53,323 nt of DNA. Source: Octopus bimaculoides (Eukaryota). The notes beneath the pieces are model-generated. The model worked only from the letters and a program-made list of their open reading frames with translations, did no database searches and had not been told where the DNA came from. The first letter of the stretch is position 1; every line of letters starts with the position of its first letter. The stretch spans positions 129,923,775-129,977,097 of the forward strand of contig NC_068981.1 in assembly GCF_001194135.2 (NCBI RefSeq), read 5' to 3'. The translations under genes were made by a program, and so were the position numbers. Of this stretch, positions 216-39,225 are shown one piece after another.

Positions 216-553
216 AATAAATTCATAAAGTGTGTATTGTCAGTGAATAGCTACAATATATTTCAGGTAATTTATTTTATTAACACTGGGAGAATGAATG
301 GAAAAAAAATCAACCTAAGTCGGATTTTGAATTTGGAAAGGACTTTCCAAACTCAAAATCCAACTTAGGTTGATTTTTTTTCATTCTCCCAGTGTTAATA
401 AAATAAATAATCTGAATATTGTAGTTCCTTTTAGACTGGTGTTTCTAACAAATTATTAAGCTTGATTTTCAGGTAAAATAAATCAAAGCCTTTGTATTAG
501 AAATTGGGCCTTTCAATTTGTTTTTGTTCAACAATGTTACTGTACTCTTATAA

Positions 554-6229: not shown

Positions 6230-6485
6230 ATTAAAAGCACTTGTGCTGATACCACATTAAACACACTTGTGCTGATGCCACATAAAAGCATCCATGCCAC
6301 TATCACCTAAAAATCTCCCAGAATACTTTGTATGGTGGTTGGCATTAGGAAGGGCATCCAGCCATAGAAACCATGCCAAAACAGACAATTGGAGCCTGGG
6401 CAACTCCCTGGCTAGTCAGCTCCTGTCAAACCATCTAACCCATGCCAACATGGAGGATGGTCATTAAATGATGGTGATGGTGATA
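6230..6485 (+). mobile_element. Old RTE-LINE-derived 3' tail
   Basis: ttggcattaggaagggcatccagc...aacccatgcc..catgga...(gat)n, the same motifs as the young copies. Confidence 0.75.
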
Positions 6486-6524
6486 ATGTTTTAAATGGAT
6501 ATTAACCTGCCTCCAATATTTCAC

Positions 6525-6740
6525 CACCATCATCATCATCATTACTACCATTTAATATCTGCTTTTCATGCTGGCATGGGTTAGATAGTTTAACAAAAGC
6601 TGATGAGCAGGGAGGACTGTGTCAAGCTTCAGTGTTTGCTTTTGCTTGGTTTCTACTGCCAGATGCACTTCCTAATGCTAACCACTTCACAGAGTGTATT
6701 AGGTGCTTTTTACATGGCACTGGCACTAGTGATGTCACCA
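6525..6740 (-). mobile_element. Old RTE-LINE-derived 3' tail, inverted relative to the previous copy
   Basis: (cat)n..tttaatatctgcttttcatgctggcatgggtt..cttcctaatgctaaccact. Confidence 0.7.
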
Positions 6741-7109
6741 GGTAACTCACAAGACAAGATTCCACAGCTGTGGGGAAATGGCTTTATGCTATGTGATGAG
6801 AAGACTGTTTGATTTGATTGTGTTGTGAGTTGCCTTCCAGAAAAACCAAATCATTCTTGATTGATGCTAATTTATGGTATCAGCAACAACATTGACAAGC
6901 AAAATCAACCTGAACACATTTGAAATCTTTAACTATAAATGCAAGTAGAATGTACATCCAAGGTAATTCCTCATGTATGTCATATATATTTAAATATCAT
7001 TTAGCAGAATTTCAAGAAATTCAGTGTATTAGACAACAAAAATACAGATAGAGAAAATCACATCTTTAATTGTTGAATTCACTATTCAAAGCTGACAATC
7101 GTTTCTTTT

Positions 7110-7739
7110 CATCATCATCATCATCATCGTTTAACGTCCGCTTTCCATGCTAGCATGGGTTGGACGATTTGACTGAGGACTGGTGAAACCGGATGGCAAC
7201 ACCAGGCTCCAGTCTGATTTGGCAGAGTTTCTACAGCTGGATGCCCTTCCTAACGCCAACCACTCAGAGAGTGTAGTGGGTGCTTTTACGTGTCACCCGC
7301 ACGAAAACGGCCACGCTCGAAATGGTGTCTTTTATGTGCCACCCGCACANNNNNNNNNNNNNNNNNNNNNNNNNNNNNNNNNNNNNNNNNNNNNNNNNNN
7401 NNNNNNNNNNNNNNNNNNNNNNNNNNNNNNNNNNNNNNNNNNNNNNNNNNNNNNNNNNNNNNNNNNNNNNNNNNNNNNNNNNTCTTACTTGGCTTGCCGG
7501 GTCTTCTCACGCACAGCCCATTTCCAAAGGTCTCGGTCCGTAGTCATCGCCTCGGTGAGGCCCAATGTACGAAGGTCTTGCCTCACCACCTCAGCCCAGG
7601 TCTTCCTGGGCCTACCTCTTCCACGGGTTCCCTCAACTGTTAGGGTGTGGCACTTTTTCACGCAGCTATCCTCCTCCATTCTCACCACATGTCCATACCA
7701 GCGCAATCGTCTCTCTTGCACGCCACAACTGATGCTTTT
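7110..7739 (-). mobile_element. 5'-truncated young RTE-clade LINE (ORF C-terminus, 3'UTR, (GAT)n tail)
   Basis: ORF 7485-7721 QERRLRWYGHVVRMEEDSCVKKC...GRGRPRKTW.E.V..DL...DR..W is the RTE ORF2 C-terminal signature. The gap 7350-7482 lies in the 3'UTR. Confidence 0.9.
7350..7482. other. Assembly gap
   Basis: N run. Confidence 1.
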
Positions 7740-8444
7740 GTATCAACATATTTAGATACAGAAAATATCATTCAAATTAATATATCTGAAAATACATGTT
7801 AACTCAACATTTTCAAGGTGATCCAAAATTAGTTAAATTCAAAGTGAACTAAGAAAATATTTTCAGTACATGAATGCATATACAAAGAACATTAAGAAGA
7901 AATATAATCTAAAAAAAGTTATTTTTGTATTCAACTCTTGGTGACATCATTGGATAACGAAAAAATAACGATGTGAATTTTATGTTATGAAAGTTGGAAA
8001 CAGAGATTCTATGTCATGACAATTATCTATTTATTGAATATAGAAAACTTTTTTTAGAAAAATTATGCTTATTATATAATATATAAAAAGCAATGATAAT
8101 TAAGAATTGAAATATTTAAATACCTTCTGAAATTTGTGATAACATTTCATTGTAAAATAGCTATTAAAATTTGATAATATTAATTTAGAAGTAATTATAT
8201 AATACATTTCTTCAAGGCAAAGATCACATGTAGAATTGCCAATATTGTACAACAGTAACTAATAATGGACCACTTTAACTCATACTTAATGTTCTTATCT
8301 TTTAATCCCAAATGCATTTACTAAGATTTTTAGAATTACTTTTTCTTCTATACTTAAATGAATGAGAATGATTATGAAATCTAGATTTCCAAGTTGTAGC
8401 AAATGAACCTTTGTGATAATATTTGTAATCCCCTGTTATTACCT

Positions 8445-11569: not shown

Positions 11570-13300
11570 CCAAGACTCAGTCAAGTAACAACAAGTTGAA
11601 TGTTTTACTATGGGTATTATTCATGATTAGCAATGACATTTTGCATGGGAAGGAGAACAGAATCTAGGAACTGAGATTCTGTTAAATTTGTAATATTTCA
11701 GTTTTGAAAGAGTTTTAAGAGAATCAGTTATTTTCAAGTTGTTGATGTTTTTCTTAGGATATAGGATGTACCTATGAAAACACTTGATATCTTGGGGCAT
11801 CTTGATTATTAGCCATACTGTTTTAGTGCACCATTTGATATTGTCCCCAGAGCTCTGATGATCACAGATAGAGTTGCTGTTCTTAGATGCCACATATTTT
11901 AGACCTCTATTTCAAAGTTCTTATATTTACTTACCTTTCAAATGTTTTTACAAAAGTGTTGCTGTCTGCTGGGATTGGAATACCTATTAACAGACATGTT
12001 TTGTCATTGTGATTTTTTTTACCACAATGTTTGGTCTAGTGGCCTGTATAGCACAATCAGTTTGAATTCTAAAATCCAAAAGAATGGTGATGTCTTTATT
12101 TTCTACTAGTTTGGTAGGCTTGTGGTCCCACCAGTTCTTCTCATATGGGAGTCCAGACTTATGGCATATAATCCATTGCAAATACTGGCCAAATCTATCA
12201 TTGTGATTAATATATTCATTTGAGGCTAATATAAAACAGCCAGAAATAAGGTGGTCCATTGTTTCCCTGGCTGCACCACAAAAGTGGTAGGCAGGATCAG
12301 CACCATTTAAAAAATGTTTTCTTGGCAGTTTCAGGTGGACATACATTGATCCTGTGCTGCAGTAATGAAGCCCTCTGTTTTTGATTTAAGTGCAGATGTA
12401 ACCAACCATTGATGGGTCATATCTGTATCTACATCAGGATCGGTGACAATGGTTTACTTTTCCATGTATTCCACAGCACTGAGAGTCTATTTGATTTGGC
12501 TTGTGTTTTTGTCTGTTTTGCTACCACAGTGAGTTCTTCTGTCTCGTCTAGTTGCATTGTAGTCTCGTTGATCTTGAATTCTTGTATTTCTTTGCTTCTT
12601 CTCATATTGAATACATATTTTGGAGCTTTCATGTTTGCAAACAAGTTTAAGCATCCAGTCATTAGTGTTCTTTAGATAGGCACCTAACGCTATGGTTGCT
12701 GTCCTTAGAGACAGTTGTAGCTGCAGCAGTTCATGCTCTTCATCTTTCATGGGGTGTATAGTCTATCTATATCTGCCTTTGGGTGATGCATGTGGTGGAC
12801 TGTGATGAGATTGTATATTTTTGTATCAATTTTACTGATTTCACTAATGGATCATTTTATGATAAAGCTGTAGGTCACCACAGATATACTTAAGTTACTG
12901 ATTGCATCAATCTTGTTTCTTGCATTAAGATTGCTCTAACTCTACAATAATATTCTTTTCATATTTTTCCTCACATTTGTGAATGCTGGATGCTATCCCT
13001 TTTACATACAGCTAAATATTTGTAATGTTTTTACTACAATTAAAAGTCATTCCAGTTGTTGATCATCTTTTGTGAAAAGCTTTAGATCATCCATGTAAGG
13101 GAGGTGATTGATTTGTCTATTGTACACTCTGTACCCATGTTTTGTCTCATTCAACAGCTTAAGTAGGAGAATGAGAACCATGCAAAAGAGTAGTGGTGAT
13201 AAAGATTTGTCTTGAAAATGCCTCAATTTATGTTTATGACACTAGTGTTCTTAGTACCTGAATCTGAATTCACTATAAGAGTTGTTTTCCATTACTTCAT
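11570..13300 (-). mobile_element. Decayed R4/Dong-type (RLE) non-LTR retrotransposon fragment
   Basis: ORF 11987-12346 has a CCHC knuckle relic (HFCGAARETMDHLISGC), EY..HN...YLQWIICHK, WWDHKP.K..EN....L.DF.IQTD..I.A.RPNIVV (the PD nuclease motif as PN). ORF 12487-12750 resembles the post-RT region. Many stops and frameshifts. Confidence 0.8.
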
Positions 13301-13305
13301 ACTAT

Positions 13306-13486
13306 TCATCATCATCATCATCATCATCATCGTTTAACGTCCGCTTTCCATGCTAGCATGGGTTGGACGATTTGACTAAGGACTGGTGAAACCAGATGGC
13401 TACACCAGGCTCCAATCTGATTTGGCAGAGTTTCTTCGGCTGGATGCCCTTCCTAATGCCAACCACTCCAAGAGTGTAGTGGGTGC

Positions 13487-13489
<3 letters not shown>
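13306..13489 (-). mobile_element. Young RTE 3' tail copy
   Basis: Near-identical to 7110-7290; ends in (CAT)n on +. Confidence 0.9.
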
Positions 13490-13547: not shown

Positions 13548-14539
13548 CAGTGGGCTGGCAGAATTGTTAGCATGTCAGGCAAAATTTGAAACCATTATTA
13601 TTGTTATTTTTGTTATCATCATTGGCTTGGTAAAGTGTCTTTTATAATAGCCTCAGGTTGACACAAGCTTGTGGACAAAAAGTGAGCAAATGTGAAAGTC
13701 CATCAAATGGACTGTACTTGAAATTCAATGATCTTATCTCACCATAACATTGTATCACACAGATTCTGCATGAGAATTACATTAAGTTTACAAAGATTTG
13801 TCAAATACTCAGCCGCTTACATGTTAATTTACTAAGTAGTTCGTTTAATTACTTGAATGACTACAATACCTCTCATTGAAATATGTGAGGGATCCATCGT
13901 TTATAAGATTGTCATCATACTTCCAAAGGGAATAAAATATGTATTTATATGTTATATATTGGTGTCATTCATAAAATTAACCTTGTGCCTTAGAAAGCCA
14001 GTATTATTGTTGTTGTTATAATTGTTGTTTATATTATTACTATTACCATCATAATTTATTTTGTCAATTTTCCTTCTTACAGGACTTCGATGACTACATT
14101 CCTAACTACCCCAATAAGTCAGCTTTGGTCAAAGCACAAGTGTCCACTGCCTGAACATCAAGACTATTCCAGCCTCAGCAGCTTCTCTTTATTATTTACC
14201 AGTTCTACTATATTTTACTGTTTTTTCTTTTCTTTTACTTGAGCCAAGAGCAAGATTTTCAGATTCTCATTGTGATTGCCGTTAGTTTCAACCTTATTTG
14301 GAAATTCACTTTTCATTGAGAAGCTTGTAAATTTGAATTTCTTTCCTTCTTTATTTGTGTATTTCATTATTATTACCATTTTATTTTATTCCATTTGGTT
14401 CAATTAAAGCTAATATGAGCTTTCACTTACTCAGAAAAAAAAATTGAAAGAAATGTGAGAACTTTTGGTTATCATAAAAATGTCCTTGTCTTTCATATTC
14501 CATTTGAGTATTGTTGCTTCTGAAAAATGTATGTTAATT

Positions 14540-15180
14540 CTTGTTATTAAAACACACTGGATTCTATTTGAAAAGAAAATACACTGGGATCTAGCTGGTA
14601 AAGATTTTGGTTTCTAGTTAAGTATTTTTAAATTCTAAATTCTTGTTAACAAAATATACTGGATTCTAATTAACAAAATATATGGGATGTTATACTGTTA
14701 ATAGCTGATTTACAATGCTCAAAATAAAATACACCAACCTTTACTAATGACATAATATCTAGTTAATAAAACATGTTGGTGCTTTGTTGTAGAAACTCAT
14801 GTTTGCTTGTTATTAAAATACACTGTTTCTTTGTGATGAAATTAGTCTTGTTTTTACTGGTCAAATGATACCAGTTGTTAGTGGTTTGAACATCAACAGA
14901 TCCTAGTGGTCAAATTACATTAGTTTTTAAATGTCAAACCACCAATGTTCCTAATGTTCAAACCACAATAGTTCCTATTGGTCAAAGCATATCAGATCCT
15001 AATGTCCAAATCATAGCAGATATTGATGATCAAAACAAGTTTTTATTGGTTAAAATATTCTTGCTTCTCCTCGCCAAATTCTTAGTGGTCAACCACTACA
15101 GTTTCTCATGTTTAAATTTACCTGGTTCTTACTGGTTAAAGTTACACCAGTTTCTAGATGTCAAATTTTTCCAGCTCCTT
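14540..15180. repeat. Decayed ~24-bp tandem array
   Basis: Recurring tggtcaaa..N..gttccta / aaaatacactggattcta units about every 24 bp. Confidence 0.65.
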
Positions 15181-15494: not shown

Positions 15495-15965
15495 NNNNNN
15501 NNNNNNNNNNNNNNNNNNNNNNNNNNNNNNNNNNNNNNNNNNNNNNNNNNNNNNNNNNNNNNNNNNNNNNNNNNNNNNNNNNNNNNNNNNNNNNNNNNNN
15601 NNNNNNNNNNNNNNNNNNNNNNNNNNNNNNNNNNNNNNNNNNNNNNNNNNNNNNNNNNNNNNNNNNNNNNNNNNNNNNNNNNNNNNNNNNNNNNNNNNNN
15701 NNNNNNNNNNNNNNNNNNNNNNNNNNNNNNNNNNNNNNNNNNNNNNNNNNNNNNNNNNNNNNNNNNNNNNNNNNNNNNNNNNNNNNNNNNNNNNNNNNNN
15801 NNNNNNNNNNNNNNNNNNNNNNNNNNNNNNNNNNNNNNNNNNNNNNNNNNNNNNNNNNNNNNNNNNNNNNNNNNNNNNNNNNNNNNNNNNNNNNNNNNNN
15901 NNNNNNNNNNNNNNNNNNNNNNNNNNNNNNNNNNNNNNNNNNNNNNNNNNNNNNNNNNNNNNNNN
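15495..15965. other. Assembly gap
   Basis: N run abutting the palindrome arm. Confidence 1.
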
Positions 15966-16779
15966 AGAAAATCTATAATCTTTTATAATCTCCTTGTCAA
16001 CTTTGATCAAAAGTATTCCAGCTGTGAACATGTCGTCTTTTTATGTATAATGATCATATTATTGAATATGTTATTTATTTTTAAATAAGTGTGATTTAAC
16101 AGAGACTTAGATGTTATTGATAGCATGTTACAAGAAGTAGAATTCCTTCTAGTGTTCCCTCTTTCTGTCTCATCTCTGACTTTATAAACAAGTGATCAGA
16201 TCTGGTAAAATATAAGGAAGTGATCTCAGCATTGTAAGCTCATCAAATTGCCATGAATTTTACAATGTCATTGTTGGAACCATATTATTTTGTGATATCT
16301 AATGTAACTACATAGATTGGCTTGGTGAATGTGCAAACACTGGACACAGAAAAGTACTTGTGTGACAGTACATATTTTGCCACACAATTACTTTCCCATG
16401 TCTAGTGTTTGCACATTCACCTAACCAATCTATCTAGTTACATTAGATTTCACAAAATAATATGGTTCCAACAATGACATTGTAAAATTCATGGCAATTT
16501 GATGAGCTTACAATGTTGAGATCACTTCCTTATATTTTACCAGATCTGATCACTTGTTTATAAAGTCAGAGATGAGACAGAAAGAGGGAACACTAGAAGG
16601 AATTCTACTTCTTGTAACATGCTATCAATAACATCTAAGTCTCTGTTAAATCACACTTATTTAAAAATAAATAACATATTCAATAATATGATCATTATAC
16701 ATAAAAAGACGACATGTTCACAGCTGGAATACTTTTGATCAAAGTTGACAAGGAGATTATAAAAGATTATAGATTTTCT
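15966..16779. repeat. 814-bp inverted repeat (two ~400-bp arms, short loop near 16372)
   Basis: The ORF track shows the identical peptide on + (15462..16088) and - (16657..16878). Direct comparison gives 10 mismatches, 9 of them in the inner ~70 bp. Confidence 0.95.
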
Positions 16780-19190
16780 ATTAGTTTTCATAAGTGATTT
16801 AGTTGTTCCAGAATCAGAACCACCTACACATTCTGTTATAGTGCATGTGGCTGAATGTTCCACAAACATGTGTATCACTAATGTAATCTTCTGATAAAAT
16901 CAGTGACATTATGAGTGGCTGTTTGAATTACATGTACAATCCATCTGGCAGACTTCCACATATTTTCCCTCAACCCAGTTTCACTCACAAGGCTTGGATC
17001 AACCTGGAACTATAGTAAAAGCTATTTGTCCAAAAGTAAAATGAAGTGGGATTGAGCTGAAGACCTCATGCTTGTGAAGCAAACTTCTAAATTATTCAGT
17101 CATGTTTGCACTCTGGGACTGTACAACATCAACAACAAAAGCATGTATCTGCACTCTGTGAGCAAATCAATAAATACCTGTTAAATCACACTAAAATCAC
17201 ACTCTACCATCTTGAAAATCCAAATTAATGTAGATTCATTAGGCCTTAGACAAAGACAGAATGGTTGTGATTGGAATGATTTTGCTCATAGTTCTGCTAT
17301 ATCATGGCTGAGCTGAGGCTTAACAGCATGTACTGGTGTTAAGTAAAAAGCCAAGACTGTTAGTGTCACATAACCTGACCTGATCTGACAGACTTATATA
17401 GATGGTTTTTCCCTTTCAAACAAGAAAAAGAAAAATTATATGAAAGAAAGAGAAAAAACACCTTCTTGGACAAAGCTTTTATTCATAACTCATCTCATCT
17501 TTATTTAGCAAGTTTTATTGAGTAAGTTATAATGTCTATATTTTCCATTGTTAATTTTCTTCCAGAGTGGGTGTGAGAAAATATTGTATACAATAGAAAG
17601 CTGCAAATAAGTGGGTATGGCTTCAGTTAGGTGCCAAAGGAACTGTTGATGGTTCGTTGAGTTCATCATCTTCATTTTAAGAGACGTATACTCTTTAGTG
17701 GTTGTGACAAATCTGATAGTATGTTATTTTGCTACTTGTCTTGTTGCTATTTTACATCATCGTCTCTCTTATGTCTAATGTTCTGAAATCTGACTGTATC
17801 ACAATTTTCATGATTTCTCTCTCTCTCTCTTGCTCAAGCTCTGGTATTTTGTGTTATATCTTCATATAAACGAAGACACATTATATCCTCATCTCAAAAC
17901 AAGAAACACTTGAAATAACTCTTGATGACCAAGTCCACTTTGCAAATCTTTAATATGTAGAAATACAGCTCACTGCTTCTTTAGATCAGGCAAAAGAAAA
18001 CCACTGAAACCTATTCTCTCCTTTTTTTAATGTTGTTCAGTCAGGAAGGAAAAGCACTCCTCATGATCCTTTACAGCCCTCCAACGCTGGTGAGAGGGAA
18101 GAGGGAACCTCAGACTGGAGGCTAGACACAAATGCTTGAAACAGAGTGGACTCTGCTAAAAGCACGTAATGACCAAGTATGTAGCCACCTAAATAGGCTA
18201 CTGCAGGATTTGAACTCAGAATGCAAAGATCCAAAACAAATATAGCAAGGCATCCTGGTCTTCAATGTAACAACTCTACCAGCCCGCCACCATAGGTTGA
18301 TACTTTTATTTATTCACCCAGAAAGATGGAGGACAAAATTGACCTTGTCAGGATTTGAATTCAAAATTCAAAAAACCAGCAAGGCATTCCATCCATGCTC
18401 TAGCAACTGCTATTTTCCACCTTCAATCTCTACAAAAAAAAAAATAATAATAATAATAATAATAAACTTCAATGTTACCTCAATAAGCAAAAGTTATGTG
18501 GCATTATAATCAAAGAATATATAAATTAAGAGAACTCAGTATAGTTGTTGTGATGATTGAAAAAGTTTGTCATTTTGATGAAATGATCAAGTATAATGAC
18601 CAGTTGGGAGTAAATAGATTAAAAAGTTAGAGACATGAAGTAGATGAAAAGATGCTCACTGTGTGAGTGATGTAAGTTACAAAGAAGCAAGAATACAAGT
18701 GAGCAACATGAAAAAGAAGTAGGAAAATTAGGTAGCAGAATTGGAGGTAAATATTAAATTACCAACATTCCAAAAAGGAAAATCAGCCACAGTTTACTGA
18801 GTCAGTGGGTTGTTTTCAGATTAAGGTATTGCTGAACACCAAAGATAGAGAGGTGGTGGTGAAGAATTTGTCAAAGGAGTTGAAATAGCAAGTCACATTG
18901 TAGACATTTAACAGATCACCACTCACCTTACTACCTCTCTGTATGTGGAATTAATGAGTTTCATGGTCCAATGGTGACTCACCAACTTAGAGAACAACAG
19001 CTCATTTTCCAAGTAGGAACTTCAACTCTTGGTGGTTTGAATACTTACCTCCAAATTCACCACTCACTCCGCAACTGTTTCTTTGTAATTGTGTGTCCAT
19101 CATTGATTAATTCAATTACTACTACCACTTCCTCTCACCAACTGCCTCTCTCCCTAAACAGCTCACATGAACCAACTGTCTCCTTAAGTG

Positions 19191-20305: not shown

Positions 20306-22219
20306 AATCCTTATCAAGCATACTAAAGTGACCAGCACTGGAAGCTTGGTAAACTTTGATATAACTTTTAAAGGATCTGCAAGTTGGTGTTTGATGGTTT
20401 GTATAGTGTCACCACCAGTATTTTGTTTGTAGTCAAGATCAAGATACTTAATGCACAAATGGCCTTGGCATACAATTCAACAATTGATTGAAATGTCTTC
20501 TAGGTTGGTACTGCAAGGTATGCAAAACTTGCTGTTGTAGGTAGTGGCTACACAGTACATTTGATAACAGTTTCATTATCATTGTTAAATTCAGTTCTTC
20601 TTATAGGAAACATTATCTGCAATAAACTTGTCATATCCAGAAAGGCATTTGTCATTCTTCTACTTAGTAGCATATAAACCAGAAATTAGTATCGATCTAG
20701 TAGAATGCAAAATATGGTCAAACTTATGATATTTGAAGCTAACTATAAAATGTACACACAGAAAAATCTATTCTTTGGGATCGTAGTGTCAAGAGATGAG
20801 CTGTTAATATGAGATTTCAAATTACATTTGCTACTTGGATATTCTTTTGTCACATGAAACTTGTTCCATCTAATTTTGATTTAATAGACATACAGTTTGC
20901 TGATAAGATGAAACATTTTAAAATGTATTTATACCAGGTTCCACTTATAGGATCAGTCTGTCTTTCACTTCTTGGATTGAAAGCTTCGTGTCAGTCAAGA
21001 CAATTGTTTCCAATACAGCACCTTGGTCCATAATCGAATATTTCACTCTATATGAGACTTAATCTGCAGTTAGGAATACCACATCTTAAAGAACTGTATG
21101 GGATTAAATACTAACAAAAATCTCATCATTAAAGAAAAGATATTGCCTGAAGAAAACCATTCCACATTATTAATATTTTGCCTGTCCAATGCATTTTCAT
21201 AAGTTGGTCCTAAATGCTCATGGTTGTTTTCAGATTTTTAGTTAGCCCTTGTTTTATATGTTCTGAGTAATGTAAGGCTTTTCTTTCCTAAGTCTCAAGT
21301 TACTCTAGTAGTTAAAAATAATTGGGAATGTATATCATATATGATGCATAGACACTAGAGAAATATGTCCTGTGTATCACATGATATACAAGACAGGCAA
21401 AGGATTAACACGCAATTGGTACAGATAAACTTGATGCAAATTTTATCTGTTGGAAGAGAGAAATTAGAATGTTTCCTGTAGACTGAAAAATAAAATTCTA
21501 TATAGTTCTGAGAAGTTCCACTGAAATAACCATCTCTCATTCTGTCTTGAGAATTGTTATCTATTATTTTTCACTTTAAACTAGCACTCTGTCAGTTATG
21601 ACAATGAGGGTTCCAGTTGATCCAATCAATGGAACAGCCTGCTCATGAAATTAACGTGCAAGTGGCTGAGCACTCAACAGACACATGTACCCTAAGTAAA
21701 TCTCAGGAAAATTCAGTGTGACACAGAATATGACAAGGCTGGCTCCTTTGAATTGCAGGTAGTACTCATTTTTGATTGCAAACTGGTCAACAAGTCTCCA
21801 ACAGCAGGGAAGAAAAGTCTAATCCTAGATGGACGAAGCAAGATTGAGTATAACCAAAAAAGTTATATCACATCTATGTGGAGAAAAGAAATCAGTTAAA
21901 AAAACTCACTGGTATAAGCTCATGAAGAAGGCTTAATGACCTGTCTAACCTCAAAGCTGTAGACTTATGAAACAGACATTCTGATGTGATAATGTACATT
22001 AGCAGTACCCATGAACATTCTACACTTAGTTTAAAATTTGTAAGATGATTATACATAATCATGAAATATATTTTTTGAAATTGTACTTTGTTAGAAACAG
22101 TTAATTCTTTAGGTGGTCCACGTAGGTAGTACTGAAATCTTAGGAGATAACATCCCTGAAAGAGATGTTACACACTTGTCACATCTTCTGTCTTGAGAAT
22201 TGTTATCTATTATTTTTCA

Positions 22220-22535
22220 CTTTAAACTAGCACTCTGTCAGTTATGACAATGAGGGTTCCAGTTGATCCAATCAATGGAACAGCCTGCTCATGAAATTAA
22301 CGTGCAAGTGGCTGAGCACTCAACAGACACATGTACCCTAAGTAAATCTCAGGAAAATTCAGTGTGACACAGAATATGACAAGGCTGGCTCCTTTGAATT
22401 GCAGGTAGTACTCATTTTTGTCAGCTGAGTGAATTGGAACAATGTGAAAGAAAGCGTCTTACTCAAGAACACAACACACTGCTGGTAATCGATATCATGA
22501 GCTGAATACCCATAAGCACTAAACCAAGCACCTTC
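22220..22535 (-). mobile_element. SINE family C (partial duplicate at 21574-21774)
   Basis: gtcagttatgacaatgagggttccagttgatcc...gtgacacagaatatgacaaggctgg...actcaagaacacaacac, shared with 26234, 50366 and 51172. Confidence 0.85.
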
Positions 22536-22571: not shown

Positions 22572-22735
22572 AGGCATAGGAGTGGCTGTGTGGTAAGTAG
22601 CTTGCTTACCAACCACATGGTTCCGGGTTCAGTCCCACTGCGTGGCATCTTGGGCAAGTGTCTTCTACTATAGCCTCGGGTCGACCAAAGCCTTCTGAGT
22701 GGATTTGGTAGACGGAAACTGAAAAGAAGCCTGTC

Positions 22736-23545: not shown

Positions 23546-24086
23546 AATGAACAAAAAAAATATATATGCTGTACTTAATTCAATTTATTCATGTTACAAT
23601 AATTACAACAATTATGGCATGTTTGATTATGATTATGTCTTTAATTACACCCTAACTTAGCCTTTAAGATGTATTTATATTTATATATATATATAAGTAT
23701 GTACAGCATATCTCAGCATGTCTTCCATACTTGTAACAAAATAATACTTTCAGTTAACCCATAAATGGCGACATCATCAACTGATGCCAAAGCATCACTT
23801 TGTCAAATGTGCCTAACTGTAAGTGACCCTTTTTGATGGGAGAAATCAAGTTGCAAATCAAAGATTTATATAGCTAATGAAGAAGTTTTTTCTGACTTAC
23901 CTTCAACAAATGTGGTAGATGATGATATTCCAGGTAGCATGAGATGCTTCAACATTTGCTACTTGGATATTCTTTTGTCACATGAAACTTGTTCCATCTA
24001 ATTTTGATTTAATAGACATACAGTTTGCTGATAAGATGAAACATTTTAAAATGTATTTATACCAGGTTCCACTTATAGGATCAGTC

Positions 24087-24552
24087 NNNNNNNNNNNNNN
24101 NNNNNNNNNNNNNNNNNNNNNNNNNNNNNNNNNNNNNNNNNNNNNNNNNNNNNNNNNNNNNNNNNNNNNNNNNNNNNNNNNNNNNNNNNNNNNNNNNNNN
24201 NNNNNNNNNNNNNNNNNNNNNNNNNNNNNNNNNNNNNNNNNNNNNNNNNNNNNNNNNNNNNNNNNNNNNNNNNNNNNNNNNNNNNNNNNNNNNNNNNNNN
24301 NNNNNNNNNNNNNNNNNNNNNNNNNNNNNNNNNNNNNNNNNNNNNNNNNNNNNNNNNNNNNNNNNNNNNNNNNNNNNNNNNNNNNNNNNNNNNNNNNNNN
24401 NNNNNNNNNNNNNNNNNNNNNNNNNNNNNNNNNNNNNNNNNNNNNNNNNNNNNNNNNNNNNNNNNNNNNNNNNNNNNNNNNNNNNNNNNNNNNNNNNNNN
24501 NNNNNNNNNNNNNNNNNNNNNNNNNNNNNNNNNNNNNNNNNNNNNNNNNNNN
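24087..24552. other. Assembly gap
   Basis: N run abutting a duplicated block. Confidence 1.
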
Positions 24553-24708
24553 AGACTAACAATTATTATAGCTTTTGTAGTTATTTAAAATGAAAATAGA
24601 TACAAAAATTACCCTTAAGAAATACTTTTTTTTAATTTTTAGCCCATTTGGCACACACATTTATGCAACCCTTTCCTGCTGTCTAAGGGTTAAATATGCC
24701 ATAAGATG

Positions 24709-24930
24709 TTGAGCGTGGCCGTTTTCGTGCGGGTGACACGTAAAAGCACCCACTACACTCTCTGAGTGGTTGGCGTTAGGAAGGGCATCCAGCTGTAGAA
24801 ACTCTGCCAAATTAGATTGGAGCCTGGTGTTGCCATCCGGTTTCACCAGTCCTCAGTCAAATCGTCCAACCCATGCTAGCATGGAAGGCGGACGTTAAAC
24901 GATGATGATGATGATGATGATGATGATGAT
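24709..24930 (+). mobile_element. Young RTE 3' tail copy
   Basis: Reverse complement of 7110-7320, ending in (GAT)n. Confidence 0.9.
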
Positions 24931-26233
24931 ACACTTCATAAACATTTTAGATGCAGAGAAAGAGAGGGAAAAGGAGACTGAGCTAACTAAGGAGGCAGTG
25001 ATATTATGAACTCCCTTTCCATTATTGAATTTAAGTCTCCATTTCATTTTCATCCTCTTTCTGTTGCATGTTTACTTTAACACCCACTTTTACTCAACCT
25101 CTCACTTCTTAAAATCCTTATTTTCTCTAACTCTTCATTGATTTCAGTATTTCCACCTCTCTTTTTCCTGTTCTTTCCTTCACTGTCTTTGTATCATTCT
25201 CCATTTACCATTATCAACACCAATGCCACTGCCAGCATCACTACCATAACTACCGACAGTTTATTTCTTATATTGTTTGCGCTACTTGCACAGAATTACA
25301 CTTCCCTATTATATTGCCAAATAAGTATTATTTACATACATTGCAAAAAACTTACCTCTGAACAAATTACTTGTGTATAGAAAGCAGAGTTCCCCATCTC
25401 CATTCCACCAATTATTCCCATTCACATTAATGAGCGATGTGCAAGGGTCTGAAATTTCCTTGATGTTCCCTATGTCTACAGAGAGCAGTCCCCCACATCC
25501 TTTACTAGAGTGCTTTGTTGTTTTGCAATGGAAAAATGCAAATGAAGAAGGTAGGTCCTCTCTAGTACTGGAGAACACCTACACTTGCATAGACCTGGCA
25601 GAATGAAAACTGATAGAGGCTGAGAAGTATGATAACCTTCATTTTCAGCTTCCCATCCACGGTAACCCAATTAAGCTTTCATCTGCTGAACCACCTTGTT
25701 ATACTCTCACATCTCTCCTTTTTCATTGTACCATGTTTCTCCATGTAACTAGGAATGGTATTAGATCTGCCTGACCCTCTAATCTGTTTCACACATTCTT
25801 CTATTCATTGAATCATGATACTTGATTATTAAGAGATGGCAATTCTCTTTTACTACTATCTCTATCACTCTACCTCTTTCTCCACTGAATACACTTCTGC
25901 ATGAAGGATTACATATCAGAATGTAATTAATACACCCTACTATTACCCTTATTTTGACTGTCAATTACTTATTACTCTCTTTCACCATTGTGCCACCACT
26001 ATCTCCCATTACATCTCACCTTATTCTATCTCTTCCTTAACTTAAACCCTACTGTTCCTCCTTTCACCCACTAACTCTAATTCTTCTGTCATTCTCTCTC
26101 TCTCTTTCTCTTCACCTTTTCTATCCTCTTAAGCATTTTGCCTTGGACAAACAAATTTTATAGTATAGTAAGGTCCCTCAGCCTTGTGGGGCATAAAGCA
26201 ATCTAGTGTTGGTGCTAGGTTTTCAAGTGATAT

Positions 26234-26541
26234 TCTGTCAGTTACGACAATGAGTGTTCCAGTTAATCTGATCATTGGAACAGCCTGCTTCTGAAATTCA
26301 TGTGCAAATGGCTGAACACTCCACAGACATGTGTACCCTTAACATAGTTCTCAGGGAGATTCAGTGTGACACAGAATGTGACAAGGCTGGCCCTTTGAAA
26401 TACAGGTACTACTCATTTTTGCCAGCTGAGCAGACTGGAGCAATGTGAAATAAAGTGTCTTGCTCAAGGGCACAATGCATTGCTGGGAATTGAACTCACA
26501 ATCGTGAGCTGAGTACCCTAACCACTAAGCTATGCTCCTTC
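26234..26541 (-). mobile_element. SINE family C
   Basis: Same body as 22220; head gtggttagggtactcagctcacgattgtgagttcaattccc on -. Confidence 0.85.
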
Positions 26542-28910: not shown

Positions 28911-30838
28911 GAAAATGCATGAATCATCATTGCAACTAGGTTTCCATTTAAAAATTTTTATTTTATAATCCACTTTTGTGAACAAAACAATAGTATTGAT
29001 GGTTACAGGTTTCAAATGGTTCAGTGTATTTATGATGGTAAAAGTGATAAGGAGTATCTTGTAAATTGAGCAAATAAATAGGACATATTTCTATTTGTAA
29101 TTACTAGTTACTCATTGATGCTTATATCTTTCATTGATATGAATCAGCAAAAAATACACACACATATGATGGGTTTCTGCAGTTTCCATTTACCAAATTC
29201 CTCACTGGAATTTCAAGACTGTTATGAAAAAAACTTACCCACGATGCCATACAGTCAGATCAAACATGAAAGCATGTGATTATAAAAGTAAATTTCTTAA
29301 TTACACCAGTTATGACTAAAGAGATTTTTGCTTTTTTCTTTTTAAATAAATACAATAACATTTCATAGAATCAAAATGAATTGAGCTCAATTCAGAAATA
29401 TAGCTCCCTAGAATAAGCTTTGCCACTAACTTTTCAGAATCCATGTTCTAGATGACTTGTGACTGTAAATACCTACAGCATTTTTCTGACTTTCTAGAAC
29501 AAGGGGCAAATACAACATTTTCATTGAGAATTTTTGCTGATAAAAGGTTCAAAGAAAAATATGGTATGAACAGAATTCTAAGATGTAATTTTAGAAAGGA
29601 GAGGTTAAATAAATGCTTACTATGGAATCAGAATGTGAATTAGATGAGTAATAGGTGCCTTAGTGTGTTTAGTTTAAAACGGTATGCAGTCAGAAATATT
29701 AGAGGAGCAGAGTTTGTAGCAAAAAGAGTAGTTCTAGTATTGAAAATTGGAGAGTGAAGGCAGGTGAAAGCTTACTGAGTGAACACACTTTAAGTTTGTG
29801 CTTTAATGTAATGCAAAAATGCCTATCTTATGTGGTATGCATGGTTTCAGATATCTGAGCAGTGCTGTAGCATAAATCATATATGTTTTATGTTTTAAAA
29901 GGTGATAGTGATGAAAACCATAGAAGAAACCACTGAGAGCCCTCAAAACAACAAATATATAATGTAGGGGTCTTAGAAAGCTTAACATATGCTGTGGTGG
30001 AATTGCCTGAAAAGAAAGCTTGTGATTTGACTGTTTTATCATTATAAATATATCTTAGAAAAATTTCATAGCTTATTATGAGATGTTTACAGTCCTGACT
30101 CATATTTAAGTTGTTATTCATGAAGTATACAATTTCAGTCCTGATCTTTTTAGGAACTGGATTGAAGGTGTGTAGATTGTAATAACTGAACGAAAACTGT
30201 TACTTGACCAATGTTTTCATCAAATTAAAACTTAAAATGTCAACTGAAACATGAGCATCTTATAACATTTTCTTGTGAATATGTTTCTTTTAGAGACATA
30301 AGTAAAACTCTGCAGTTTATATTTGCCAAATGTTAAGTCAATAAAGGCGTAAAATTCAAGAATATTGATTTTTCACACTGGCACTATACTACAGATAAGT
30401 AACTCATTACATGACTAGTACCTATTCAACTAATCCCACAAAGATGCAAGATGAAGTAGTAAAATGTCATTAAAACTGGAGAATGAGAGAATTAAATACT
30501 TTAAGTGTTCAGTCTAACATTTTTCATCAGACTTCATCCAACCTTAAATTCAAGGAGATTGAAAAACAAAACAAAGTTTCTGAGTTTACTATTTTTTTCT
30601 CATTTTTTAATTTTGTTTTTTTTTTGCTTTTATATAGTAAGAAAAAAGTTATGTTGTTCATGGGGCTTCTTACTATGGTTGTAATTGTTTGTTTTGCTAG
30701 CTACCAACTTCTCACAAGAAGAGTGCTACAGTTTGAAACTGGCTGTCCATCTACACAGTGTAAACAAACAGGGTACAGTATCTTCTAAAAGGAGGTAGGC
30801 AGGCAGGCATTGATATAATAACCTAAGTTTAGTCTTCG
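28911..30838 (-). other. Probable PRELID3 3'UTR (far end uncertain)
   Basis: Mostly unique AT-rich sequence after the stop, with an AATAAA on - near 28960 just before the mariner fossil. The end is not demonstrable. Confidence 0.4.
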
Positions 30839-30964
30839 TCATAATGATGTTGCTGTAGAATGGTTCGTTGGTAATACAGAATCCATACATTTTTTAGCTT
30901 CTTCGGTTAAATCCTTAGCTTCTCCTTTCAGTTTACCAATCACCCATTCCATTGCTTGTCGGCC
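30839..30964 (-). CDS. PRELID3B: PRELID3/SLMO2 last coding exon
   Basis: ctttgtttttgcag|. Translates GRQAMEWVIGKLKGEAKDLTEEAKKCMDSVLPTNHSTATSL*, stop TGA at 30841-30839. GR.AMEWVI is conserved in the family. Confidence 0.94.
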   Translation of the reverse strand, partial: GRQAMEWVIGKLKGEAKDLTEEAKKCMDSVLPTNHSTATSL

Positions 30965-31580
30965 CTGCAAAAACAAAGACAATTAGTGAATTATTGAAAT
31001 AAAGGATTATAAACTATTTTCAAAATATGTCATAGTGTCACTTCTAATGAGTAAATGAGGAGATTTTTAAATGATTGCTTCACCATTTAAATACTACAAC
31101 ACCAAACTTTCCCTCTAATAAATCTCTAGTCTGAAATCAATATGCTCAGATATTAATTTGAACATATTGGGACTAGCTGAATAACAGATAAAGAAAATTA
31201 TATATATATATCATATAATGGAGTCGTTTATTTGTTGAAAGAGTTGTCTTGTGAATCACTTAAATATGAATTAGGACTGGAACCAGTTTTGGGTTCATTC
31301 AGTCAACTTGATCAAGTAGAAGTTTAGCAGCATAACACGTTGATGGATTTATAGATTGTTCAAACTAATAAGTTCTGGCCATGTTGAAATACTTTCTTTC
31401 TAAAATGAAACATCATGAATTGATGTGTCAACCTAATGCCATGCTAATGTGTTCTGCCTTGTTCCAATTTAGAATGCGTAAAATTTGAACTTGTGGTCAC
31501 TGTTGTCAGTAGAATATAATAAACATGATAATTAAAAGTTTGTTTTCCATTTTTTATGCTTCAAATACAAAAACAAATTA

Positions 31581-31736
<156 letters not shown>

Positions 31737-31817
31737 TTAGAAAATTTGGTATTAAAACAGAACACAAAAACTTTGAGATGATGTGCTTTCAAGTAATGTT
31801 TTTTTAAATCCTCTTTA

Positions 31818-32020
31818 ATCCTTTAACATTTAAAATGACCATATCCAGCCCAAATATTGTACCTGATCTATGTTCAAATCAACCAGATCTAGCCTCTTAC
31901 ACTTGCCCTACAATGTCATTCTAAAAATGACAATCATAACATCAAAATCTCAAAGCTATGAGATAATGTTAACAAATAGGCATTACATTTGACAGAGTAA
32001 TCTGAATGTGAAAGGGTAAA
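31818..32020. mobile_element. piggyBac-like MITE
   Basis: ttaatcctttaacatttaa...ctgaatgtgaaagggtaaa; same body as 33116. Confidence 0.7.
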
Positions 32021-33115
32021 CATCCTATTTCTAAGAATACACATCCTTTAAATTAGTGAAAAACCAAAATGGATAAGAAAGTTGAAGCATCTGGAGATGA
32101 TCAACAAACTAGAATAGATAGAAACAAACAAAACTGCGGTTGGTATGGAAAAATACCTGCTGCCCAACAGTAACTCCTAAAAAAAATATAGACATATGAT
32201 AATTAAATAAGTTTAGCTACTGGAAAGAATAATTCAATTTAAAGAAACAAACAACACTAATGACTGTGATGATGATAATAAATAGAACAAAAGAAGGATG
32301 CTTCTTTTTGATAACAGTAAAGAGATAAGGGTGCCCTAAATGTTTACAGGTCAACCCCTTAGCATTCAGCTTATTTTATCAAATGCACAGATATAGCCAG
32401 TTTAAACACTAAAGGGCTAAACAGACAAACAGTGAAACAAAGTAGACACACAGGCAGTCAGAAAAAAATGGGAAGTAGTTCAAAACAAAACAGGTCAATT
32501 ATGATCACTTAACTTTGAACTATCAAAAGACAAATTATGGGTTGCCTCATAATTTGTTTGAAGTCTGAGTTTACTATTTTTTTCTCATTTTTTAATTTTG
32601 TTTTTTTTTTGCTTTTATATAGTAAGAAAAAAGTTATGTTGTTCATGGGGCTTCTTACTATGGTTGTAATTGTTTGTTTTGCTAGCTACCAACTTCTCAC
32701 AAGAAGACTTCAAGGCATTCTAAGACTAATTCATATATTGTTTTGAAAAAATGTAGAAGTCATTTCAGTTTATGTGGAAATCTGCCAGAAACAGCAATTA
32801 TAGATTTATATCTATAATTACTAAATATTTAATTACAAGTCATTGACTGGCAGGAACTGTAGAGCATTGAGGTTAATAATTTATGATATCTAGTTTTGCT
32901 TCTGTTTTGAATTTATGCCCCAATTTTAATCACAGTCAATAAGTACCAGAAATATATTTGAACTGATTCCATAAACTATAGCCTATGGGATTTTATGACC
33001 ATTCCACATTATACTAATATATTCCTGCTGTGAAAAAATAGGATGGTAATTGCAATATTTTTTTAATGAATTTCCTAATAATCATAAAATGTTTGTTGCA
33101 GTTCAGACTATTTAA

Positions 33116-33335
33116 ACCTTTAGCATTTAAACTGGCCATGTCTGGCCTAAATATTCTACTAGTTTTATGTTTAAACTGGTCAGATCTAGTCTGTCATATC
33201 TAGCCGACAATGTTATTCTAAAAACAAACAATCACATCATCATAATCTTTAAGCTTGGATATAATGCATGATTAATTCAAAACAATGTAAATAAATAAGC
33301 ATTATATTTGACAGAATAATCTGAATGCTAATGGG
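33116..33335. mobile_element. piggyBac-like MITE with TTAA flanks
   Basis: TTAA|acctttagcatt ... aatgctaatggg|TTAA. A short deletion derivative lies at about 32353-32420. Confidence 0.75.
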
Positions 33336-34359
33336 TTAAATCACAATTTTAACACTGTGGGGATACTTTCAAGAGAAAGACAGAATCCAGAACAAAAGAA
33401 ATGCATTACAAGGGTGGCCCTTACATATATTTATGACTGTTGCTCTTTGAGTGAACATTTTACTATGTGATGCTTTACACAGAACAGTGAAACCAATTAA
33501 ATCAACAGTGTTGAGCCAAGCTTCTGAAGTCACTAAATAAAGTGCTAGTTTAGGGCAGTGGAATGAGGAAATTGATAGAATGTCAGTCGGGATGCCTTAC
33601 AGTATTTGTTCCAGTGCTTTGTTCTCCAAGTTCAAATCCTGTCATAGCATACTTAGGTGGTAGACTTAGTCAGTCATCTGGTTTAACACTAGCATCTTGT
33701 CCTTGAGTGTTTTTAATAGAGTTCACTTCATTGCAAGCTTCCTCCCTCCCACCACACTCATCAGTTCTCTCAGAATCATGGGCACATATATAATAAACTT
33801 ATCAAACACTGGTACTGTACAGTATCCACAGCTAAGACTCTTTCACTTTCACAGACTCTTTCACAGTTTCTTAACTGTAGTTATAATGAATAGATTTAGC
33901 TAATTGTCATAAGCAGCCAGGACGAGTGTTTTGTTAATTAGTAAAACTGAACTCAAATCTTCCTATGGACTTCAATCAAACAATAGAAAACGACTTAAGA
34001 ATACTTCCCCTTGAAATCCTTAGGAAGTGGTTGATGACAAACATTTAAGATATTTTCTTCATAAAATTAGTAAGCTAACGATGCAGGCATCAGTAGCTTA
34101 GTGAGAGCCCCCAGTACCCCAGTGTGGTGAGGTATTCTTTTGCATCTTTACCTTAATGGGCATGAAAGGCCATAGGACATTTCAAACCTTCTCATATCTC
34201 CACTCCACCTGGGATATGGACATGCAGTTAAAAATGTTGGATTGGGTTCTGGGTTCATTCCTACTGCATAGCAACTAGAGCAAGTATCTTCTACTACAAC
34301 CTTGGGTTTACCAAGACCTTGTAAATAAAATGTGGTCAATAGAAACAACAGAATCATTC

Positions 34360-34396
<37 letters not shown>

Positions 34397-34584
34397 CAGT
34401 GTGAATTGACAAAACTGGTGCAACTAAATGCAGTAGTATTTTGGTTTCTGTTATGGTTATGCCCCTTCGTGGATGAGCACAAAATAAATACCAAAGTACT
34501 GGAGTTGATATAATTAACTAAAGCTCTTTTGGCTGTGTTCCAGTGCAATAAGAAATTCAAATATTTTTTCTAGAAAATCTGCCA

Positions 34585-38202: not shown

Positions 38203-38339
38203 CTGGATAAAATATAAAATAAAATTGCAATAATTTTTATTTCATCTCTACAGAATATAATGATAATTATGATGTAAATTAATTTCTATTTCAAATGTGC
38301 AAGTCAGAGGGATACTACTATTTACTTACTTTGTCATAA

Positions 38340-38931: not shown

Positions 38932-39225
<294 letters not shown>

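What the first reader, a model, noticed from the sequence alone, without database searches (positions are those of the whole stretch)
15966..16779. 814-bp palindrome whose arm identity rises with distance from the loop
Seen: the arms pair without net indel around ~16372. The outer 263 bp (15966-16228) are identical, there is one mismatch at 16229, then another ~65 identical bp, and 9 mismatches crowd the inner ~70 bp. The left arm runs into a 471-N gap, so the true arm may be longer. Known: centre-proximal asymmetry stabilises long palindromes, and arm-to-arm conversion homogenises arms. Inference: either a real, self-homogenising fold-back (a ~400-bp dsRNA if transcribed, so an ADAR or siRNA substrate), or a real ~140-bp imperfect hairpin at which library template-switching or the assembler created a false outer arm.
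Basis: partly seen in the sequence, partly recalled or inferred. Interest (0 to 1): 0.7.

Follow-up and report, generated by a model that had tools for sequence, protein, structure and literature searches.

The report
Gap-edge palindrome, probably part artefact
An 814-base mirror-image repeat really is in this draft animal scaffold, but only its ~150-base imperfect centre is safely genuine; the near-perfect outer arms start exactly at an assembly gap and are about as likely a copying or assembly error as a true young duplication.

Summary
The arms are 15966-16367 and 16378-16779, centred on 16372.5, with no indel. The left arm starts at the first base after the 471-N gap. Identity falls into two regimes: 13 of 77 pairs are mismatched within 77 bp of the centre, against 1 of 330 outside it (p=2e-9). 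A step and a smooth gradient fit equally well.

The core (about 16296-16449) is a stable imperfect hairpin. Its two halves share no k-mer of 19 or more, so a de Bruijn graph alone could not fold back there. The junction must rest on reads, either real DNA or snap-back chimeras.

The locus is intergenic, about 14 kb past a slowmo/PRELI-like gene. It matches no RNA family and no coding sequence, and the arm has no other copy in the window.

The window also holds three 100% identical direct local duplicates with abrupt edges. One of them also ends exactly at a gap. No local duplicate of intermediate identity exists, which points to the assembly rather than to biology.

No independent copy of the locus could be reached, so real versus false stays open. 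My estimates are: false outer arm about 0.5, real young fold-back duplication about 0.3, and long-inverted-repeat element or conversion-maintained palindrome about 0.1 each. Interest is low.

The parts
15495..15965 (.). 471-N scaffold gap. It hides whatever lies left of the left arm, so the true outer end of the arm and the true left flank are unknown.
15966..16228 (.). Outer left arm, 263 bp. It is a perfect reverse complement of 16517-16779 and starts at the first base after the gap. This is the part whose reality is in doubt.
   Evidence: perfect run of 263
16229..16229 (.). The only mismatch in the outer 330 bp: G here against T at 16516, a transition (G vs A) between the arms. It is either one substitution between two real copies or the two alleles of a heterozygous site in a single real copy.
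16230..16295 (.). 66-bp perfect stretch of the left arm, pairing with 16450-16515.
16296..16367 (.). Inner left half of the imperfect core hairpin: 10 mismatches in 72 pairs (6 transitions, 4 transversions) and no indel.
16368..16377 (.). Central 10 nt, the loop. 3 of its 5 mirror pairs are mismatched.
16378..16449 (.). Inner right half of the imperfect core hairpin.
16450..16779 (.). Right arm outside the core. It runs on without a break into the right flank and is the presumed original copy. It carries the partner mismatch at 16516.
16780..17111 (+). Right flank (context only). An old, diverged SINE copy, 64-68% identical to 48074-48354 and 13627-13863, whose 5' edge lies at about 16770-16790. 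The assembled arm therefore ends at the edge of this SINE.

Best explanation
Only the central ~150 bp (about 16296-16449) is a securely genuine feature. It is an old, imperfect hairpin-forming inverted repeat in intergenic DNA, with 72-bp arms about 86% complementary and a 10-nt loop.

The outer left arm (15966-16295) is most likely a false copy of the right flank. In this reading, single strands ending in the hairpin snapped back on themselves during library preparation. They were then extended along their own right flank, giving molecules of the form rc(right flank)-core-right flank. The true left flank was probably low-complexity, AT-rich sequence that the assembler could not build. So the contig end was extended with these fold-back reads, and afterwards with ordinary right-flank reads read in reverse, until extension stopped and the gap was left. 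The single outer mismatch would then be a heterozygous site sampled as different alleles in the two passes.

Shown: the two-regime anatomy, the stability of the core hairpin, the exact abutment on the gap, the impossibility of a graph-only fold-back, and the presence of other suspicious perfect duplicates. Inferred: that the supporting reads are chimeric rather than genomic.
For: (1) The left arm starts at the first base after a 471-N gap. A false fold-back extension must end in a contig end.
(2) The pattern is what snap-back priming predicts. Mismatches are confined to a pre-existing hairpin (13/77) and identity is essentially perfect from there outward (1/330).
(3) The core is a strong single-strand hairpin: DNA -57 kcal/mol, z=-15; RNA -96 and -108 kcal/mol.
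(4) Internal control: the same 53 kb holds three 100% identical direct duplicates of 135, 235 and 144 bp. They have abrupt edges and no terminal inverted repeats, target-site duplications or junction microhomology. One of them (23952-24086) also ends exactly at a gap.
(5) No local duplicate of 93-99.9% identity exists apart from members of a dispersed repeat family. A real, ongoing duplication process should leave many older copies.
(6) The left contig ends in (TA)n(CA)n and AT-rich low-complexity sequence. That plausibly makes the true path unassemblable.
(7) Literature: natural inverted repeats seed chimeric fold-back reads in sonicated and enzymatic libraries (PMC10908179). Short-read SPAdes assemblies contained 81 wholly palindromic contigs that their authors judged assembly errors (PMC9455707). 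False duplications at contig boundaries next to gaps are among the commonest assembly errors (10.1101/2020.05.22.110833). Iterative gap filling can choose wrongly among similar sequences (PMC3626529). Long, highly similar palindromes with short spacers are unstable in vivo (PMC7999016).
Against: No reads were available, so nothing shows directly that the arm is false.

A chimeric path normally has far lower coverage than the true path and would be pruned, so this explanation needs the true left flank to be missing from the data.

The single mismatch at 16229/16516 is more simply explained by two real copies. Its correct phasing to each arm is possible with reads of 68 nt or more.

A contig break exactly where inverted identity ends, with the right side contiguous, is also what a real two-copy inverted repeat produces through an unresolvable fork after 263 identical bases.

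Two of the three direct duplicates lie inside contiguous sequence, which is harder to explain as an artefact. If they are real, local perfect duplication may be a true property of this genome.

The mismatched centre would itself stabilise a real palindrome against cruciform extrusion. The assembler and library types are unknown.
Confidence: 0.5

Rival explanations
1. Real, young inverted duplication seeded in vivo at the older hairpin. A break or a stalled fork beside the 72-bp imperfect inverted repeat let the 3' end snap back and copy at least 330 bp of its own flank. The end then rejoined the chromosome. The core is old (about 14% diverged) and the outer arms are young (0.3% diverged). No gene conversion is needed.
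For: It predicts the same two-regime anatomy. It accounts for the single outer mismatch as one substitution since the event. The contig break sits exactly at the end of inverted identity, with the right side contiguous. That fits an unresolvable fork after 263 identical bases, the same logic that would explain the direct repeat ending at the gap at 24086. The junction cannot be a graph-only error. Breaks next to 42-229-bp inverted repeats produce palindromic duplications in yeast and CHO cells (PMC7999016), and divergent inverted repeats can do so in single-stranded DNA (PMC10164571, abstract). Other natural hairpins exist in this window: 250-425 and 6295-6725.
Against: Fold-back events in vivo usually give chromosome-scale palindromes or very short templated insertions (5-34 bp; PMC11724301, abstract). 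A 0.3-0.8-kb interstitial arm needs a second switch back. There are four perfect local duplicates and none of intermediate age in 53 kb, which is not what a steady real process leaves. The arm's exact abutment on a gap is equally an artefact signature.
Confidence: 0.3
2. A mobile element with long terminal inverted repeats (foldback- or MITE-like). Its family consensus would have perfect outer repeats and a partly self-complementary middle. This would be a young copy, and the gap exists because short-read assemblers break at young repeats.
For: The window carries another MITE-like hairpin (250-425, about 77-nt arms, 93-95%) and head-to-head repeat copies (6295-6725). Gaps in this scaffold do sit beside young repeats: 7109-7323 and 24706-24920, 98% identical.
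Against: There is no second copy of the arm or the core in 53 kb, even at about 60% identity. The ORFs have no transposase or any Pfam domain. Termini and target-site duplication cannot be seen because the left end lies in the gap. The hairpin pattern and a core-left 33-mer are absent from the metagenome collection, and the 33-mer is also absent from the genome-contig collection; these are weak tests, since neither collection is expected to hold this genome.
Confidence: 0.1
3. A real, old palindrome whose outer arms are kept identical by arm-to-arm gene conversion. The ~75 bp next to the turn escape conversion, for example because two stiff duplex segments less than about 150 bp apart cannot synapse, and so they diverge.
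For: Divergence is confined to within 62-88 bp of the centre. That means the unconverted DNA spans about 125-175 bp, close to the persistence length of duplex DNA; this comparison is my own inference. An exponential gradient fits as well as a step. Arm-to-arm conversion is documented for large sex-chromosome palindromes (PMC6790999, abstract).
Against: Known conversion-maintained palindromes have kilobase-to-megabase arms. 330 bp of homology is near the lower limit for efficient recombination (own knowledge). There is no sign of function or selection: the locus is intergenic with no RNA family and no coding similarity. The model is not needed, because a single copying event explains the same data. 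All the doubts that come from the gap edge still apply.
Confidence: 0.1

Closest known systems
Fold-back (snap-back) chimeric molecules formed at natural inverted repeats during library preparation, and the palindromic contigs or false contig-boundary duplications they and assemblers produce (PMC10908179; PMC9455707; 10.1101/2020.05.22.110833)
   Same: A natural imperfect inverted repeat sits at the centre. The sequence beyond it is the exact reverse complement of the other flank. The duplicate ends at a contig boundary next to a gap.
   Different: Such chimeras are normally low-frequency and are outvoted by true reads. Here the arm is 330 bp or more, longer than one short read, and it carries one base difference from its source. 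The libraries and assembler used are unknown.
Palindromic duplication in vivo initiated by a short inverted repeat next to a double-strand break (yeast, Tetrahymena and CHO work reviewed in PMC7999016)
   Same: A 42-229-bp inverted repeat acts as the snap-back primer. The product keeps the original repeat and spacer at its centre and has perfect arms outside.
   Different: The documented products are chromosome-scale, often dicentric, palindromes or gene amplifications. They are not a sub-kilobase interstitial arm in a germ-line genome.
Human palindromic AT-rich repeats (PATRR11, PATRR22, PATRR17; PMC1851657, PMC3197554)
   Same: Several-hundred-bp, nearly perfect, AT-rich palindromes in non-coding DNA. 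Central asymmetry lowers their propensity to form secondary structure. They are notoriously hard to sequence and assemble.
   Different: Their defining behaviour (cruciform extrusion, recurrent translocations, size and symmetry polymorphism) was not testable here. At 30% GC the palindrome is barely more AT-rich than the window average of 34%.
Hairpin-RNA (endo-siRNA) loci of Drosophila and other animals (own knowledge)
   Same: A long inverted repeat with arms of about 400 bp and a short loop. It would give a long dsRNA if transcribed: -650 kcal/mol for the 814-nt RNA.
   Different: There is no evidence of transcription or small RNAs. The arms resemble no gene that could be a target. The locus is intergenic.
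Foldback / MITE transposable elements
   Same: The whole unit is one long inverted repeat with a short middle. The host genome is repeat-rich and has other hairpin elements.
   Different: No other copy was found. No termini or target-site duplication are visible. Divergence is strongly non-uniform along the arms.
Large sex-chromosome palindromes maintained by arm-to-arm gene conversion (PMC6790999)
   Same: Near-identical arms around a non-identical centre.
   Different: The arms there are 10-1000 times longer, contain genes and have a true unique spacer.

Membership tests
False fold-back duplication at a contig boundary (library or assembly artefact) | The duplicated copy ends at a contig end or gap | tested here: met
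   The left arm begins at 15966, the first base after the N run 15495-15965.
False fold-back duplication at a contig boundary (library or assembly artefact) | A natural hairpin at the turn, with exact identity beyond it | tested here: met
   13/77 mismatched pairs in the core against 1/330 outside. Core ssDNA hairpin is -57 kcal/mol.
False fold-back duplication at a contig boundary (library or assembly artefact) | Read or k-mer depth over the two arms sums to single-copy depth, and no reads link the outer left arm to a left flank | not testable with these tools
   No reads or independent assembly of this genome could be reached.
False fold-back duplication at a contig boundary (library or assembly artefact) | Could arise from the assembly graph alone (shared k-mers between the two halves of the turn) | tested here: not met
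   The two core halves share 0 canonical k-mers at k=19 or above, and the longest perfect run is 18 bp. Read support, chimeric or real, is therefore required.
Foldback / MITE transposable element | Multiple copies in the genome | tested here: inconclusive
   No other copy in the 53-kb window down to about 60% identity. The rest of the genome is not available.
Foldback / MITE transposable element | Defined termini flanked by a target-site duplication | not testable with these tools
   The left end is inside the gap.
Hairpin-RNA / endo-siRNA locus | Long, nearly perfect RNA hairpin | tested here: met
   The 814-nt RNA folds into one hairpin, -650 kcal/mol, z=-57. This holds only if the assembled arms are real.
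Hairpin-RNA / endo-siRNA locus | Transcription and small RNAs from the arms, and similarity of the arm to a target gene | tested here: inconclusive
   Expression is not testable. There is no Pfam domain and no protein homologue for any arm or flank ORF. The locus is about 14 kb beyond the last coding exon of the nearest gene.
microRNA precursor | Match to a curated family at its gathering score | tested here: not met
   No hit at gathering thresholds. The best sub-threshold hits are 24-30 bits against gathering scores of 70-119, on both strands, which is generic hairpin signal. The core stem is also far longer than an animal pre-miRNA.
PATRR-like palindromic AT-rich repeat | Nearly perfect palindrome of several hundred bp that is markedly AT-rich | tested here: inconclusive
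   97% complementary over 402-nt arms as assembled. GC is 30% against a window mean of 34%, so it is not distinctly AT-rich for this genome.
PATRR-like palindromic AT-rich repeat | Cruciform extrusion, polymorphism, rearrangement hotspot | not testable with these tools
   This needs population and experimental data.
Conversion-maintained large palindrome (sex-chromosome type) | Kilobase-to-megabase arms around a unique spacer, often with genes | tested here: not met
   Arms are 402 bp as assembled, at most about 870 bp if they fill the gap. The spacer is 10 nt and there are no genes.

The most novel reading that the evidence does not exclude
The palindrome is real. It is either kept homogeneous by arm-to-arm conversion that physically cannot reach the ~75 bp next to the turn, which would give a natural read-out of the minimum loop size for intramolecular synapsis. 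Or it is a young hairpin-RNA gene caught just after birth by fold-back copying at an older hairpin, and would produce a ~400-bp dsRNA (an siRNA or ADAR substrate) in an invertebrate.
Probability: 0.1. Interest if true: 0.5.

Novelty: not a real feature. Interest (0 to 1): 0.2.

Why it matters
If the outer arm is false, the value is practical. A perfect inverted copy that starts at a gap edge and turns at a natural imperfect hairpin is a recognisable signature. It should be masked before anyone counts palindromes, hairpin-RNA genes or ADAR substrates in this assembly. The three perfect direct duplicates in the same 53 kb suggest that the problem is systematic here.

If the arm is real, it would be a clean natural example of a short, old inverted repeat seeding a larger young palindrome in a germ line. 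That mechanism is so far documented mainly in yeast, in cultured cells and in tumours. Either way it is not a new kind of element.

Tried and rejected
Attempts to find an independent copy of the locus:
- Exact look-up of ten ORF products from the arms, centre and flanks in the 15-billion-protein collection found none.
- A concatenated 1336-aa query of all stop-to-stop frames of the left flank, core, right arm and right flank found no hit.
- The hairpin pattern and a core-left-specific 33-mer gave no hits in metagenome contigs, and the 33-mer gave none in genome contigs.
- The slowmo-like exon found only a Logan relative at 86% protein and 80% DNA identity, with no conservation outside the exon. 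It is useless for the palindrome 22 kb away.

Other tests that led nowhere:
- RNA families: nothing at gathering scores, and only generic sub-threshold miRNA-hairpin hits.
- Pfam on local ORFs: nothing.
- Transposon reading: no second copy in the window.
- G·U bias as a sign of RNA-level selection: 5 of 6 inner transitions are G·U on the minus strand, which is not significant (two-sided binomial about 0.2).
- Gradient versus step: not distinguishable.
- SINE-induced stop of the contig walk: no exact 12-mer or longer from 16700-16860 recurs elsewhere in the window.
- k-mer jump or microhomology, terminal inverted repeats, or target-site duplications at the edges of the three direct duplicates: none.
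- Allelic (haplotype) duplication for those duplicates: rejected, because the sequences between and around the copies show no further similarity.
- PacBio missed-adapter palindrome: rejected on the sequence. There are no indels, and the centre is an imperfect genomic hairpin rather than a clean adapter-type junction.
- Organism: not identified. The tRNA-like SINEs, 34% GC and ~8-kb contigs reminded me of a cephalopod draft genome, but that is memory, not a test.

Full report
**What is there.** The window is an AT-rich (34% GC) eukaryotic draft scaffold. It has five N runs (133, 471, 466, 12 and 112 N), many microsatellites and many copies of SINE-like repeats. At 15966-16779 there is a single inverted repeat, with arms 15966-16367 and 16378-16779 (402 nt, 97% complementary, 10 nt between them). 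It is by far the longest inverted repeat in the window. Pairing base i with base 32745-i gives no indel. The mismatches are at 16229, then at 16296, 16311, 16321, 16323, 16342, 16347, 16348, 16350, 16357 and 16365, plus three of the five central pairs. The left arm starts at the first base after the 471-N run 15495-15965.

**Shape of the identity profile.** Within 77 bp of the centre 13 of 77 pairs are mismatched; outside it 1 of 330 is (Fisher p=2e-9). The maximum-likelihood change point is 77 bp from the centre, with a support interval of 62-88. A two-rate step (lnL -41.8) and an exponential decline (lnL -40.1) fit equally well. Inside the inner stem the mismatches are compatible with a uniform spread (KS p=0.5). 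So the sequence shows two regimes: an old imperfect core (about 14% diverged, 6 transitions and 4 transversions, no indels) and a nearly perfect outer part (0.3%). A continuous gradient is not demonstrated.

**The core.** The stretch 16290-16455 folds into one hairpin. As RNA it gives -95.8 kcal/mol on the plus strand and -108.3 on the minus strand. As single-stranded DNA it gives -57.2 kcal/mol, z=-15. The better minus-strand value reflects five transitions that are G·U on that strand, which is not significant. The whole 814 nt folds at -650 kcal/mol. Rfam gives nothing at gathering scores. At relaxed thresholds it gives only generic miRNA-hairpin hits of 24-30 bits, against gathering scores of 70-119, on both strands.

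**Context.**
- The arm sequence is unique in the window down to about 60% identity.
- The right arm runs without a break into an old SINE copy. This copy is 64-68% identical to 48074-48354 and 13627-13863, and its 5' edge lies at about 16770-16790, so the assembled arm ends at the edge of that SINE.
- No exact 12-mer or longer from 16700-16860 recurs elsewhere in the window.
- The left contig ends in (TA)n(CA)n and AT-rich low-complexity sequence.
- The nearest gene is a PRELI/slowmo-like gene on the minus strand. Its exons lie at about 39195-39040, 36415-36353, 31703-31602 and 30967-30893 (PF04707 on a relative). The palindrome lies about 14 kb beyond the gene's last coding exon and is therefore intergenic.
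- Local ORFs have no Pfam domain and no homologue.

**Can the assembler alone have made it?** The two halves of the core share no canonical k-mer at k=19 or above, and the longest perfect run is 18 bp. A de Bruijn graph with any usual k therefore cannot turn back at the core by itself. Reads must exist that join core-left-specific sequence to the reverse complement of the right flank. Those reads are either genomic or snap-back chimeras.

Snap-back of a single strand ending in the core, followed by extension along its own flank, gives exactly rc(flank)-core-flank. It keeps the core's mismatches and gives perfect identity outside. The same holds whether it happens in a tube or in a germ cell. 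Natural inverted repeats are documented seeds of such chimeric reads (PMC10908179). Breaks next to 42-229-bp inverted repeats give palindromic duplications in yeast and CHO cells (PMC7999016).

**Internal control.** The same 53 kb contains three 100% identical direct duplicates with abrupt edges:
- 20824-20958 = 23952-24086 (135 bp). The second copy ends exactly at the 466-N gap.
- 21540-21774 = 22186-22420 (235 bp).
- 30579-30722 = 32564-32707 (144 bp).

Two of them are otherwise unique sequence. None has terminal inverted repeats, target-site duplications or junction microhomology. Apart from one dispersed repeat family (94-98%), there is no local duplicate of 93-99.9% identity. A real, continuing duplication process should leave many more old copies than brand-new ones. 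Four perfect copies and no intermediate ones, with two of the four ending exactly at gaps, points to the assembly.

The literature agrees that false duplications at contig boundaries next to gaps are among the commonest assembly errors (10.1101/2020.05.22.110833). Short-read assemblers also emit palindromic contigs by error (PMC9455707), and iterative gap filling can choose wrongly among similar sequences (PMC3626529).

**Arguments the other way.** A contig break exactly where inverted identity ends, with the right side contiguous, is also what a real two-copy inverted repeat gives. A k-mer walk from the core can phase the 16229 variant, which lies 67 bp from the nearest core mismatch. It cannot resolve the fork that follows 263 identical bases. 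The single outer mismatch is most simply one substitution between two real copies. A chimeric path would normally be outvoted by the true path. Two of the three direct duplicates sit inside contiguous sequence. The mismatched centre would stabilise a real palindrome. The window also holds other natural hairpins: 250-425 (about 77-nt arms, 93-95%) and 6295-6725 (two head-to-head copies of a repeat, about 73%).

**Independent data.** None could be reached. Exact and homology look-ups of ORFs from the locus found nothing. DNA patterns found nothing in metagenome or genome contigs. The only relative found is 80% identical in one exon and unalignable outside it. The question 'one copy or two' therefore stays open. 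It needs read depth, phasing of 16229/16516, or long reads.

**Verdict.**

| Explanation | Probability |
|---|---|
| Real ~150-bp imperfect hairpin with a false outer arm | about 0.5 |
| Real young fold-back duplication seeded at that hairpin | about 0.3 |
| Long-inverted-repeat mobile element | about 0.1 |

None of these would be a new kind of element. The dsRNA/ADAR/siRNA reading has no support beyond the fold itself. Interest is low.

Noticed in passing
window 20824-20958 and 23952-24086: A 135-bp direct duplicate, 100% identical, of otherwise unique sequence, 3128 bp apart. The second copy ends exactly at the 466-N gap (24087-24552). The left edge is abrupt, with no microhomology. It may be a false contig-end extension or a real repeat that stopped the assembler.
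   Followed up: partly
window 21540-21774 and 22186-22420: A 235-bp direct duplicate, 100% identical, 646 bp apart. It consists of an old SINE fragment (81-84% to other copies) plus about 35 bp of flank. The edges are abrupt and the 411 bp between the copies is unique. A perfect copy of an old, diverged SINE together with its flank cannot be two independent insertions.
   Followed up: partly
window 30579-30722 and 32564-32707: A 144-bp direct duplicate, 100% identical, of unique sequence, 1985 bp apart. The two copies bracket the last two coding exons of the slowmo-like gene. There are no terminal inverted repeats or target-site duplications.
   Followed up: partly
window about 30893-39195, minus strand: A PRELI/slowmo (PRELID3-like) gene. 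Exon matches lie at 39195-39040, 36415-36353, 31703-31602 and 30967-30893. The closest relative in the protein collection is a 52-aa Logan ORF (86% identity, PF04707). It is the only clear host gene in the window.
   Followed up: partly
window 250-425: A natural MITE-like hairpin: about 77-nt arms, 93-95% complementary with small indels, and a 2-nt loop. It is similar in size to the core of the palindrome but unrelated in sequence.
   Followed up: partly
window 6295-6725: A ~430-bp imperfect palindrome (about 73%). Its sequence motifs suggest two head-to-head copies of the repeat family also seen at 7109-7323, but this relationship was not tested by alignment. Divergence is uniform along the arms, unlike the finding.
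   Followed up: partly
window 7109-7323, 13306-13489, 24706-24920, 34999-35196: A young dispersed repeat family (94-98% between copies). Two copies lie within 30-160 bp of gaps, which shows that contig breaks in this assembly track young repeats.
   Followed up: no
window 7488-7742 (-) and 11990-12385 (-): Open frames that look like the C-terminal tails of non-LTR retrotransposon (LINE) reverse-transcriptase proteins. This is by eye only: the one tested (11987-12346) has no Pfam hit, and the other was not scanned.
   Followed up: no
window 22583-22676, 47195-47288, 44928-45020, 51961-52053 and others: Many copies of a tRNA-like SINE and of a second SINE-like family (26215-26500, 50356-50553, 51136-51447, 48074-48354, 16790-17111), at 60-92% identity. 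Together with the microsatellites they make up much of the window.
   Followed up: no
window 14536-15034: A degenerate 24-49-nt tandem or interspersed repeat array just left of the microsatellites that precede the gap.
   Followed up: no
window 16636-16746 and 17171-17293: Weak direct similarity (62% over 125 bp, including an exact 15-mer CTGTTAAATCACACT) between the outer right arm and the sequence just beyond the SINE. It may be an old duplication split by the SINE insertion.
   Followed up: no
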